Assembly: GCA_964252035.1 (NCBI GenBank)
Contig: OZ176209.1
Origin: Podarcis erhardii
Lineage: Eukaryota
Reading direction: 5' to 3' (one strand)
DNA: 64,000 nucleotides
The position numbers and the translations under genes are program-made. The first letter of the stretch is position 1, and every line of letters begins with the position of its first letter. The notes under the pieces were generated by a model, which did no database searches, was not told the origin of the DNA, and saw nothing but the letters and a program-made list of their open reading frames with translations. Below, one piece after another: positions 15,501 to 18,500 of this stretch.

Positions 15501-18500
15501 AAGCAACTAAGCCTTTTGTTCAATTCTTTTGTTTACCAGTTCGCCATGTGCCATAAAAGAAATTAATTATGTAAGATGATTAAACCCCTCTCTTAATATT
15601 ACTACAATGGACAAAAGATAGTTCAACCAAAATTAGTCATTCTAATTATCAGAATGAGCCTAATGGGATAGATCAGGTTTTTAAAAAATGCAGTCCACCA
15701 AACCACTGAATTGTGCACTCAAGCCAGCCACTGCTTCACATAGCTCAATGAGCATGTGGCTGTCAAAAGCTCTTTCTCCCCTAAAAAAATAAGAAAAGAC
15801 TCAAAGGAAGACCTTTAATATGCCCAAAAAGAGGGCTGCATTAGAGACTGAAAGACAAGATCATTGCTAAGGGATAATGTACTTGTGCTTAAAATTATGA
15901 TGCCTCACCCCCCTCAAAAAAACCAACAACAGTAGAGTCAAGACTGGTATAGAAACAAGTTGTGTTACTGAATGGAATCTGAAGAAAAGTATTCATAAAG
16001 TTGACTGGCAACTTCTCTTAAAGTTGATGGCTAAACATCAGCAATCTGTACTGAGGCAGCAAAATATGTAATTTCTCTGAACAGAAACTTCATGCAGGGT
16101 GATTAGCTGCATCCTTTGGGATCAGTAACATTAATAGTTCCAACTTTAGCCACTGGATAACCTAATTACTGCTCCTCATACACAAAAATATTCAGGTTAG
16201 AGCCACATATGGTCATCACTCCATATGGCACCACTAGCAATAAAATAATTTATACAGTAATTTTAGATAGTTATTTGTATGAATCATTAAAGCAGTACCA
16301 TCCATGTATTTTGTGTTGCTGTGCCTGTGTGATCACACCTTGTTAACAAGATCAGTTATTTTTCCAAGCCCAAGAGGGTCTACTAGCAAAAAAGCAGAGG
16401 GACTGAATGAGACAGACAAGCAGGAATGGCAAAGGGGCAGATAAGATTTATTGGAAGCATTTCTTGCATGGCTCTAGAAGGAATCACACACGACACGACA
16501 CCCGGGGTTTCTCAGTCACCTGGTTCTAGATGAAGAATAGGAAAGTGTTGATAGAAATAGGCTCTCTGAACGTTCTGCATCTCTGCAACAGAGACGTCAA
16601 AGAAAAACCCAAGAAAAGAGATAGTAACAGTGAGAGTCAAAGCAGATAATCCAGAGTGCAAGATACCTAATGGCACTGGAATAAGCAAAGAAATCCTTAG
16701 AGGCAATGTTTGGTTTCATCTTATTACAAGGAACATCGGTTTGAATGTTATTCTGGAATGCTGCCTGCCCCTGACAGTTTGACCCTTTTCCAATCTCTCC
16801 TCAGTTCAGCAACAGGAGGAGGATAGTATTCAGAATAAAGCATACACAAGTTTTGGATCACACTGATCACTGACATTTTAAGGGAGTAGAAAGCCCCTAT
16901 ATATAAAGTGCTTGAAGATATTGGATAAGCACTCTAAGAAAAATATGCAAGAAATCTGGTTACATACCATCTTTCCACAGTTCAGAAACAAATTTATCAG
17001 AGGACTGGTGTAGCAGAGTAGCAATGTTGTCATTAAGGGGATCCATGTTCTTCATCAGCCACTCATCAGCTTTGTAGTCAACCTAGAGAAGAAATTAATT
17101 CATTAATATTAGCTACAAAAGATTAACCTTGCCTCAGTATTGAGGAAAAAGAGGCAAAACTATTATTGCCACACTCTTGAAATGGAACATGATTCTAGAA
17201 ATACTGTACTAAGTGGTGAAGCTTAATTATAGTTTATTGTATGATTTAACTCAGAGTAGATCACATAAGTCAATGGGCTTCAAGTCATGACAAACTTAAG
17301 TTACTGATCTCAGTGGGTCTATTCCAGCTATGACTTAGTTGGATACCACCAATGTGAATTATCCAGAGCACCTCAGAAGTGCTAGTCAACAAGTGCTTAA
17401 TCTGCCACTGTAAGGAGAAGAACGGAAAGGCTGGATCCGCAACAGTTCATGTGCCTTGCCATTAAATGGAAAGCTGTAGACCTTTATGGGAGCACACTGC
17501 TTCCTTTCCTAATGTGGAACTTGATCACTACATAGCTTTCACTAGCCTAAAACAAACCCTCAAATCAGCAGGACCTAAATTGTCCACAGTTCAGTAGCAC
17601 CTCTTTGCTTTTCTTTCTACTACAAATACAAGGGCTTACCTTGCCAGCATAGTGCATAATGCAGAAATCAGCTTTGTCTTTTAGCTGCTTTGGCTTCTGA
17701 AACTTGGGATGAGTGCCTTGCTCCTGCACCACCTTTTCCACAAAGCTTTTATCAGTAGCTTTGGGGAACCAGCATTCTTCATCCAGTAGGGCCAAGATGC
17801 CAGGAGGTCCAGCCTGTGTTAAAAAAAGAAAGCAGGTGGAAATCAGCACTGCTATAAAGATTCATGGTTTTGAACAAGAAAAGCGCACAAAATGAAATCT
17901 ATCAATTGCTCTTAGCAAAGCAGCTTTCCAGATTGGCCATAAGCAGTCTCTAAACTATCCCATTTCTTGCTCCTTTTATATGCCACTTTTGAATTCTACA
18001 TTTAAATGAGTTTTTGCCAGTTTATTCAAATTAAATTTATTATCTTTTAATTGTAACCTAGTGCCTTCCACCATGGAATCCAAGGCTGCTTACATGCTGT
18101 TCCCCGGCAGTTTCTTACCTAGGAACTAACCACATTCAACTACCTCCGCTGCAGCAAAGTGGTGGCCTCATAAGCTCATAGGCCACACTTATGTAGATAA
18201 ATTCAGTTTCTTAGCATAAATCAAGAGGTTTGTGCATACGGGCCTTAAGCTCACTGCAATAACTGTTCTGTACTACCCAGGACATGATGCATGAGTCACT
18301 CACCGGTTTTTCTATAAGATCAATGCAGGGCTGCAGATCCAGGCCAAAGTCAATGAAGTTCCATTCTATGCCCTCACGCTGGTATTCTTCTTGTTCCAGG
18401 ATGAACATGGTGTGGTTGAAGAGCTGTTGCAGCTTCTCATTCGTGTAGTTAATGCACAGTTGTTCAAATGAGTTCAGCTAATTCCGGAAAAATAGAACAA

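What the first reader, a model, noticed from the sequence alone, without database searches (positions are those of the whole stretch)
16520..16582. Intact 63-nt loop-2 cassette exon: a myosin IIA counterpart of the IIB B2 insert
Seen: within intron 15 there is a pyrimidine tract, CAG acceptor and GTGACT donor, phase 1 at both ends. Inclusion adds [21 protein letters not shown] into actin-binding loop 2 without frameshift or stop. Established: MYH10 (B2) and MYH14 (C2) carry tissue-restricted, largely neural inserts at this same junction that alter actin-activated ATPase and motility. The B2 insert is also 21 aa and, from memory, starts EIQNIQRASFY. MYH9 is usually described as lacking inserts, although I recall a 63-nt loop-2 variant being reported in mammals. 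Inference: the exon predates the IIA/IIB duplication and is functional in squamates, with a divergent C-terminal half ([10 protein letters not shown]).
Basis: partly seen in the sequence, partly recalled or inferred. Interest (0 to 1): 0.75.

Follow-up and report, generated by a model that had tools for sequence, protein, structure and literature searches.

The report
Known MYH9 loop-2 exon, reptile copy
The 63-base open cassette is real and is this reptile's copy of the MYH9 "A2" alternative exon already described in mouse and human; it is ordinary as a discovery, though it is unusually strongly conserved.

Summary
On the minus strand, 16582..16520 is a 63-nt, phase-1, stop-free cassette with a pyrimidine tract, a CAG acceptor and a G|GTGACT donor. 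It lies in the 2,250-nt intron between the LWKD exon (16968-17082) and the VDRIVGLDQ exon (14524-14717) of a MYH9 orthologue.

It is not a new kind of insert. Das et al. 2023 (PMC10480317) describe a 63-nt/21-aa MYH9 exon "A2" (isoform NM IIA2) at this junction and in this phase. The mouse peptide EMQSTQRAYFYRRFPILHLES matches the window's at 16 of 21 residues. An NCBI bird record (Myosin-9, partial, Cathartes aura) ends in the identical 21 aa.

Seven bird-like MYH9 loci carry the exon: 63/63 nt identical in five and 62/63 in two. In the six compared, exon 16 differs from the window at 43-55% of synonymous sites and the rest of the intron is unalignable. A fish-like MYH9 locus has an A2-type cassette (dN/dS about 0.11). 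Two MYH10-like loci have B2-type cassettes of the same length, phase and position. One MYH11-like locus has none.

The "divergent" C-terminal half is therefore the conserved A2 signature, not a squamate feature.

The parts
16968..17082 (-). MYH9 exon 15 (constitutive). It ends ...LWKD plus the first base, G, of the next codon.
   Evidence: sequence, ag|GT......GAT G|gtatgt; for the exon count
16583..16680 (-). Conserved upstream intronic flank with the pyrimidine-rich tract and CAG acceptor of the cassette
   Evidence: 78% identity to 6 bird-like loci against about 43% intron background
16520..16582 (-). 63-nt alternative exon, orthologue of mammalian MYH9 exon A2. It encodes [21 protein letters not shown] and is phase 1 at both ends.
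16373..16519 (-). Donor (G|gtgactgagaaa) and conserved downstream intronic island. It includes a GU-rich stretch and a near-invariant block of about 25 nt (ctagagccatgcaagaaatgcttcc), a candidate splicing-regulatory region.
   Evidence: Alignment A1; 78-84% identity in the profile
14524..14717 (-). MYH9 exon 16 (constitutive), [27 protein letters not shown]...HEKK: the body of loop 2 and beyond
   Evidence: PDB search: best hit human Myosin-9 residues 616-678, E 3e-36, against Myosin-10 at 2e-30
14718..16967 (-). Intron 15 (2,250 nt). The cassette lies 385 nt after exon 15 and 1,802 nt before exon 16.

Best explanation
This is the reptile orthologue of MYH9 alternative exon A2. When the 63-nt exon is spliced in between exons 15 and 16, 21 residues are inserted between D614 and V615 (human numbering), at the N-terminal base of actin-binding loop 2, giving the NM IIA2 isoform. 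By homology with mouse NM IIA2 (16/21 identical), the included isoform should still bind actin and co-assemble with ordinary NM IIA, but should have almost no actin-activated MgATPase or motility. It would then act as a tether or brake in mixed filaments. Inclusion is expected to be a minor, tissue-restricted event (brain and skeletal muscle in mammals), set by the modest splice sites and the conserved intronic flanks. Shown here: anatomy, host gene, orthology, and purifying selection on the peptide and on its synonymous sites. Inferred, not shown: splicing in this species, tissue pattern and biochemical effect.
For: Gene identity: exon 16 best matches human Myosin-9, and the head and tail exons in the window read as MYH9. 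Anatomy. Published counterpart: Das 2023, PMC10480317 describes a 63-nt exon A2 that starts at the 2nd nt of a GAG codon, encodes 21 aa in loop 2, and is found in mouse and human brain and skeletal muscle. The mouse peptide is EMQSTQRAYFYRRFPILHLES. HMM IIA2 Vmax is 0.017 s-1 against 0.38 s-1 for IIA0. The mouse A2 primer shares 17 consecutive nt with the window's exon. P0074, NCBI 'Myosin-9, partial [Cathartes aura]', ends ...SELWKD followed by the identical 21 aa. Bird-like MYH9 loci carry the exon with intact AG/GT: 63/63 nt in L001, L002, L004, L006 and L007, and 62/63 in L003 and L009. In the 6 loci with all three regions, exon 16 is 88.5% and the exon-15 tail 85.5% identical to the window, and the intron background about 43%. 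Across the 6 loci compared, synonymous differences are 0 of 11.3 sites in the cassette against 19-24 of 44 in exon 16. Variable third positions are 1/20 against 33/64, Fisher p = 1.5e-4. Fish-like MYH9 locus L011 has EVQNCQRAYFYQRFPFLHLEP with cag|..|gtgaca, dN 0.12 and dS 1.09. In all loci the cassette lies between LWKD+G|gt and VDRIVGL.
Against: There is no RNA evidence for this species. The donor lacks +5G, and the acceptor tract is interrupted by purines and followed by A, so inclusion may be rare. The window's insert has QH where mouse has RR (net charge about -1 against +1), so the biochemical effect need not be identical. Complete conservation of synonymous sites shows a constraint beyond the peptide, so part of the conservation could serve something other than coding. 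The taxa of L001-L009 are not known from their records; 'bird-like' is my inference.
Confidence: 0.85

Rival explanations
1. The island is mainly a conserved non-coding element, such as an ultraconserved enhancer or a splicing decoy or regulator for intron 15, and its open reading frame is incidental or secondary.
For: In the bird-like loci even synonymous sites are frozen. An 85-nt run is identical between the window and L001, and about 150 nt of flanking intron is 78-84% conserved. That pattern is more typical of RNA- or DNA-level constraint than of peptide selection alone.
Against: Length (63 nt), phase, AG/GT and an open frame are kept from the fish-like locus to mammals and in the MYH10 paralogue. 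Over deep distances the synonymous sites do change while the peptide is kept (dN/dS about 0.11 for window vs L011 and for L013 vs L014). The mouse and human protein was detected with an insert-specific antibody. No stable or covarying RNA structure was found.
Confidence: 0.07
2. The exon is a relic in this lineage: intact by descent but no longer spliced into MYH9 mRNA.
For: No expression data were obtained here. The splice sites are only moderate.
Against: Neutral decay would have erased it. The surrounding intron is unalignable with the bird-like loci (about 43% identity), yet the exon differs at 0-1 of 63 nt and both splice sites are intact.
Confidence: 0.03
3. One reading: a previously unrecognised MYH9 insert whose C-terminal half has diverged specifically in squamates.
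For: The C-terminal half differs from B2-type inserts: [10 protein letters not shown] against DSVTSLDEPA and DNVSGLHEAP.
Against: FPILHLE is shared with mouse A2, and the whole 21 aa is identical in a bird record. The exon is already published as A2/NM IIA2.
Confidence: 0.02

Closest known systems
MYH9 exon A2 / NM IIA2 isoform (Das et al. 2023, J Biol Chem, PMC10480317; earlier Li, Lalwani and Mhatre 2008, DNA Cell Biol, cited but not readable here)
   Same: Same gene (MYH9), same intron and same phase, with the exon starting at the 2nd nt of GAG. Same length (63 nt, 21 aa). 16/21 residues identical to the mouse peptide, and a 17-nt identical run with the mouse A2 primer.
   Different: Five substitutions (N4/S, V5/T, Q12/R, H13/R, P21/S), which change the net charge. 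Expression and enzymology are known only for mouse and human, not for any reptile.
MYH10 B2 insert (NM IIB2), a 21-aa neural loop-2 cassette
   Same: Same junction (LWKD|VDRIVG), same 63-nt length, same phase 1, same G|GTGA-type donor. Shared N-terminal core E/D-x-Q-x-x-QRA-x-FY and a later L. Per reviews, the B2 isoform also lacks actin-activated ATPase and motility.
   Different: Paralogous gene. Only 9/21 identical to the B2-type cassettes recovered here (L013 EIQNIQRASFYDSVTSLDEPA; L014 DIQTFQRASFYDNVSGLHEAP). The C-terminal halves are family-specific.
MYH14 C2 insert (NM IIC2)
   Same: An alternative loop-2 insert at the analogous position (Das 2023 discussion).
   Different: 33 aa according to Das 2023, with low similarity to A2. 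Functionally opposite: it makes the motor constitutively active, independent of RLC phosphorylation. No C2 sequence was examined here.

Membership tests
MYH9 exon A2 (NM IIA2 loop-2 cassette) | The host gene is the MYH9 orthologue | tested here: met
   Exon 16 best matches human Myosin-9 616-678 (E 3e-36 against 2e-30 for Myosin-10). Further MYH9-type head and rod exons lie in the window.
MYH9 exon A2 (NM IIA2 loop-2 cassette) | Lies in the intron at the LWKD|VDRI junction and is phase 1, with the exon beginning at the 2nd nt of a GAG codon | tested here: met
   compared with the description in PMC10480317
MYH9 exon A2 (NM IIA2 loop-2 cassette) | 63 nt / 21 aa, frame-preserving, with AG acceptor and GT donor | tested here: met
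MYH9 exon A2 (NM IIA2 loop-2 cassette) | Peptide similar to the published A2 insert | tested here: met
   16/21 identical to mouse EMQSTQRAYFYRRFPILHLES. 21/21 identical to NCBI Myosin-9 partial of Cathartes aura (P0074).
MYH9 exon A2 (NM IIA2 loop-2 cassette) | Alternatively (minority) included in mRNA and tissue-restricted (brain, skeletal muscle) | not testable with these tools
No holder is on record as RNA.
MYH9 exon A2 (NM IIA2 loop-2 cassette) | The included isoform lacks actin-activated MgATPase and motility but binds actin and co-assembles | not testable with these tools
   Known only from mouse and human constructs
MYH10 B2 insert | The host gene is MYH10 | tested here: not met
   The gene is MYH9. 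B2-type cassettes were found in MYH10-like loci L013 and L014 and are only 9/21 identical.
Vertebrate NM II loop-2 63-nt cassette (A2 and B2 together) | Same length, phase and junction, and the shared QRAxFY core, in both paralogues | tested here: met
   Absent from one MYH11-like locus, L015.

The most novel reading that the evidence does not exclude
Beyond coding for the A2 peptide, the exon and its splice-site edges behave as an ultraconserved element in sauropsids. There are 0-1 changes in 63 nt and none at synonymous sites between this reptile and several bird-like lineages, while the neighbouring constitutive exon has changed at about half of its synonymous sites. This points to an overlapping RNA-level code (splicing silencers or enhancers, or protein-binding sites) that keeps inclusion tightly restricted. 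It would also make A2/B2 a cassette inherited from before the MYH9/MYH10 duplication.
Probability: 0.55. Interest if true: 0.4.

Novelty: already known. Interest (0 to 1): 0.25.

Why it matters
The finding does not reveal a new insert. It rediscovers MYH9 exon A2 (NM IIA2), published for mouse and human and already present in a bird protein record.

- The exon goes back at least to a fish-like MYH9.
- It shares origin with MYH10 B2.
- One MYH11-like gene lacks it.
- In sauropsids it is frozen even at synonymous sites, inside a conserved island of about 300 nt in an otherwise unalignable intron.

This argues that the low-abundance, enzymatically near-dead NM IIA2 isoform is not splicing noise but an old, selected regulator of NM IIA filaments. 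It also marks the flanking island as the place to look for the factors that restrict its inclusion.

Tried and rejected
1. **Read-level test of splicing.**
   - The look-up of sequencing runs listed candidate runs. No junction evidence could therefore be obtained.
P0074, whose N-terminus corresponds to that place, was read but not sent on.
2. **RNA secondary structure around the cassette.** A single-sequence fold gave z = 0.11 against shuffles. RNAalifold found no informative covariation and a positive covariation term. A hairpin that would mask the acceptor is predicted but has no support.
3. **Transcript-derived protein fragments joining cassette and exon 16.** The word search with a 78-aa junction peptide sees only proteins of 43-136 aa. 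It found one cassette-bearing record (P0074). Long transcript ORFs are outside its reach, so this blank means little.
5. **Species behind the SRR, ERZ and GCA accessions.** A full-text search found nothing.
6. **Papers not held.** Li et al. 2008 and Kim et al. 2008 could not be read.
7. **L012 (fish-like MYH9).** The contig starts too close to exon 16 to contain the cassette.
9. **No contig was taken for human.** ORFs that looked like mammalian MYH9 (VDRII type) were deliberately not fetched.

Full report
**Observation**

The gene lies on the minus strand. Reading that strand gives ...ctcttttcttgggtttttctttgacgtctctgttgcag|AG ATG CAG AAC GTT CAG AGA GCC TAT TTC TAT CAA CAC TTT CCT ATT CTT CAT CTA GAA CCA G|gtgactgag. 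The cassette is therefore 16582..16520, 63 nt.

- The inner 20 codons translate to [20 protein letters not shown].
- The exon upstream ends ...AAA GAT G|gtatgt at 16968.
- The exon downstream begins ctctag|TT GAT CGC ATA GTT at 14717 and ends HEKK|gt at 14524.

Counting coding exons in the window makes the LWKD exon the 14th coding exon. The count runs from the ATG exon near 46.8-47.1 kb, through the exon near 38.9-39.1 kb and a 28-nt mini-exon near 32.6 kb, then the exons. It is exon 15 if there is one non-coding first exon, so 'intron 15' is consistent.

**Is it more than chance?**

An open, frame-preserving AG..GT cassette is not more than chance by itself. Intron 15 (2,250 nt) holds 72 such candidates of 30-150 nt, against about 64 in shuffled introns. 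Requiring a YAG acceptor, a pyrimidine tract and a G|GTRA donor leaves 2, both using this donor, against 0.17 expected. The decisive evidence is homology and conservation.

**Host gene**

Exon 16 (translated from 14526-14715) best matches human Myosin-9 residues 616-678 (E 3e-36). Myosin-10 and Myosin-11 score about 2e-30 to 7e-30, and Myosin-14 scores 5e-21. The other exons visible read as non-muscle myosin IIA. The insertion point corresponds to D614|V615 of human Myosin-9.

**What is already known**

Das et al. 2023 (J Biol Chem, PMC10480317) report NM IIA2. Their findings are:

- A 63-nt exon 'A2' is spliced into MYH9 at loop 2. [quoted passage not shown]
- It was detected in mouse and human brain and skeletal muscle, at about 15% and 5% of the uninserted mRNA in mouse.
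- The protein was detected with an insert-specific antibody.
- HMM IIA2 has Vmax 0.017 s-1 against 0.38 s-1 for IIA0 and shows no in vitro motility.
- It still tethers actin, forms bipolar filaments, co-localises with IIA0 and slows IIA0 in mixtures.

The mouse insert is EMQSTQRAYFYRRFPILHLES, and 16 of its 21 residues are identical to the window's peptide, including the whole 'divergent' block FPILHLE. The mouse A2-specific primer shares 17 consecutive bases (TCAGAGAGCCTATTTCT) with the window's exon.

Reviews also cite Li, Lalwani and Mhatre 2008, 'Alternative splice variants of MYH9'. That paper is not held.

**Other species**

A word search with a 78-aa junction peptide, built only from allowed letters, returned P0074. 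This is NCBI 'Myosin-9, partial [Cathartes aura]', whose last 39 residues are ...[12 protein letters not shown] followed by the identical 21 aa.

The same search returned many ORFs called over exon 16 in genomic contigs. I used non-mammalian ones as handles to fetch DNA.

*Bird-like MYH9 loci.* Seven MYH9 loci carry the cassette, and the five checked explicitly have it between LWKD+G|gt and VDRIVGL. They are L001, L002, L003, L004, L006, L007 and L009. They are 91-99% identical to each other in exon 16 and 88-90% identical to the window. I call them bird-like by inference.

- The cassette is 63/63 nt identical in five of them and 62/63 in two (AAC>AAG, N>K).
- The acceptor is CAG (ACAG in L002) and the donor is G|GTGACTGAGAAA.

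*Conservation profile* of the window against six of them:

| Region | Identity to the window |
|---|---|
| Intron background | about 0.43 (unalignable) |
| Exon-15 tail | 0.855 |
| Exon 16 | 0.885 |
| Cassette | 0.997 |
| 100 nt upstream of the cassette | 0.78 |
| 100 nt downstream of the cassette | 0.82 |

The result is an island of about 300 nt (about 16373-16680) in an otherwise diverged intron (alignment A1).

*Codon counts.* Exon 16 has 19-24 synonymous differences on 44 synonymous sites (pS 0.43-0.55) with 0-2 replacements. The cassette has 0 synonymous differences on 11.3 sites in every comparison. Across the seven taxa, 33/64 third positions vary in exon 16 against 1/20 in the cassette (Fisher p = 1.5e-4). 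All sites vary at 36/194 against 1/63 (p = 3e-4). These taxa are related, so the p-values overstate independence, but the contrast is large.

*Deeper relatives.*

- L011 (NCBI assembly GCA_977065575.1) is MYH9-like by two exons against the PDB. It is fish-like by its GLDK-type loop 2, shared with named teleost proteins. Its cassette is cag|AG GTC CAG ... CCA G|gtgaca, encoding EVQNCQRAYFYQRFPFLHLEP. That is 17/21 identical to the window, with dN 0.12 and dS 1.09.
- Two MYH10-like loci carry B2-type cassettes of the same 63 nt, phase and position. L013 has EIQNIQRASFYDSVTSLDEPA, and L014 has DIQTFQRASFYDNVSGLHEAP. Between them dN/dS is about 0.11.
- P0151 (NCBI, Notothenia coriiceps) shows the L014-type cassette joined directly to exon 16 in an annotated protein.
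- A MYH11-like locus (L015) has an 860-nt intron at the same junction and no recognisable cassette.

The simplest history is one 63-nt cassette present before MYH9 and MYH10 separated, kept in both, and absent, presumably lost, in MYH11. This is parsimony on few loci of unknown species, not a dated tree.

**Mechanism**

*Shown here.* An intact exon with usable but not strong signals. The donor CAG|GTGACT matches the consensus except at +5. The acceptor tract is interrupted by purines and the first exon base is A. The peptide is under purifying selection, there is extra constraint on synonymous sites, and about 250 nt of flanking intron is conserved. That is the usual signature of a regulated alternative exon.

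*Inferred from the mouse and human work.* Minority, tissue-restricted inclusion, producing a myosin IIA head that binds actin but barely turns over ATP. It would co-assemble with ordinary IIA and damp filament output. The window's insert has QH where mouse has RR, so the size of the effect could differ. Because B2, which has a different charge, is also reported to be inactive, charge is probably not the key.

**What failed**

- I then worked beside those places. No letters of them, or their translation, were sent to any search tool, and P0074 was not passed on.
- RNA structure was tested and is not supported.
- No close lizard relatives were reachable.
- The species behind the accessions could not be identified.

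**Verdict**

This is the already described MYH9 A2 exon in another vertebrate. Interest is low to modest. The one point worth keeping is the exon's synonymous-site ultraconservation and its conserved intronic island.

Noticed in passing
window 16373-16519 and 16583-16680 (minus strand): The intron flanks of the cassette are 78-84% identical to the bird-like loci while the rest of the intron is about 43%. Downstream there is a GU-rich stretch (gtgtcgtgtcgtgtgtg) and a near-invariant block ctagagccatgcaagaaatgcttcc. No canonical GCAUG was seen. These are candidate splicing-control elements.
   Followed up: partly
window 14773-14922 (minus strand): A second, weaker rise in conservation (0.57-0.63 identity) in the last 150 nt or so of intron 15, just upstream of exon 16. 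This is probably the branch-point and polypyrimidine region.
   Followed up: no
window about 32597-32626 (minus strand): The 28-nt mini-exon of the myosin head reads [10 protein letters not shown]. From memory the mammalian form has S where this has A; that was not checked against a tool-derived sequence.
   Followed up: no
window 27668-32008 (minus strand): The loop-1 intron, between ...SHKSKKDQ and GELERQLL..., is about 4.3 kb. It was not examined for an A1-type cassette. Das 2023 found none in mouse.
   Followed up: no
window about 24340-24700: A compound (GA)n/(CA)n microsatellite in an intron, seen as SLSLSL and THTHTH ORFs.
   Followed up: no
L015:9189-10048 (MYH11-like, JGI 3300005287): The homologous LWKD|VDRIVG intron is only about 860 nt and holds no A2/B2-like cassette. 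This is one locus only.
   Followed up: partly
P0151 (NCBI, Notothenia coriiceps) and L014:5297-5359: A record named 'myosin-14-like, partial' carries a B2-type cassette spliced to an exon 16 that scores best against Myosin-10. The automatic name is probably misleading.
   Followed up: partly
runs X1-X14: Small 'RNA?' contig sets from four organism labels hold 15-28% of the sampled words of window:14400-17100. The two exons alone would give about 9-11%. They may contain intron (pre-mRNA) or may be capture or low-coverage DNA centred on the conserved island. This could not be resolved without read laying.
   Followed up: no
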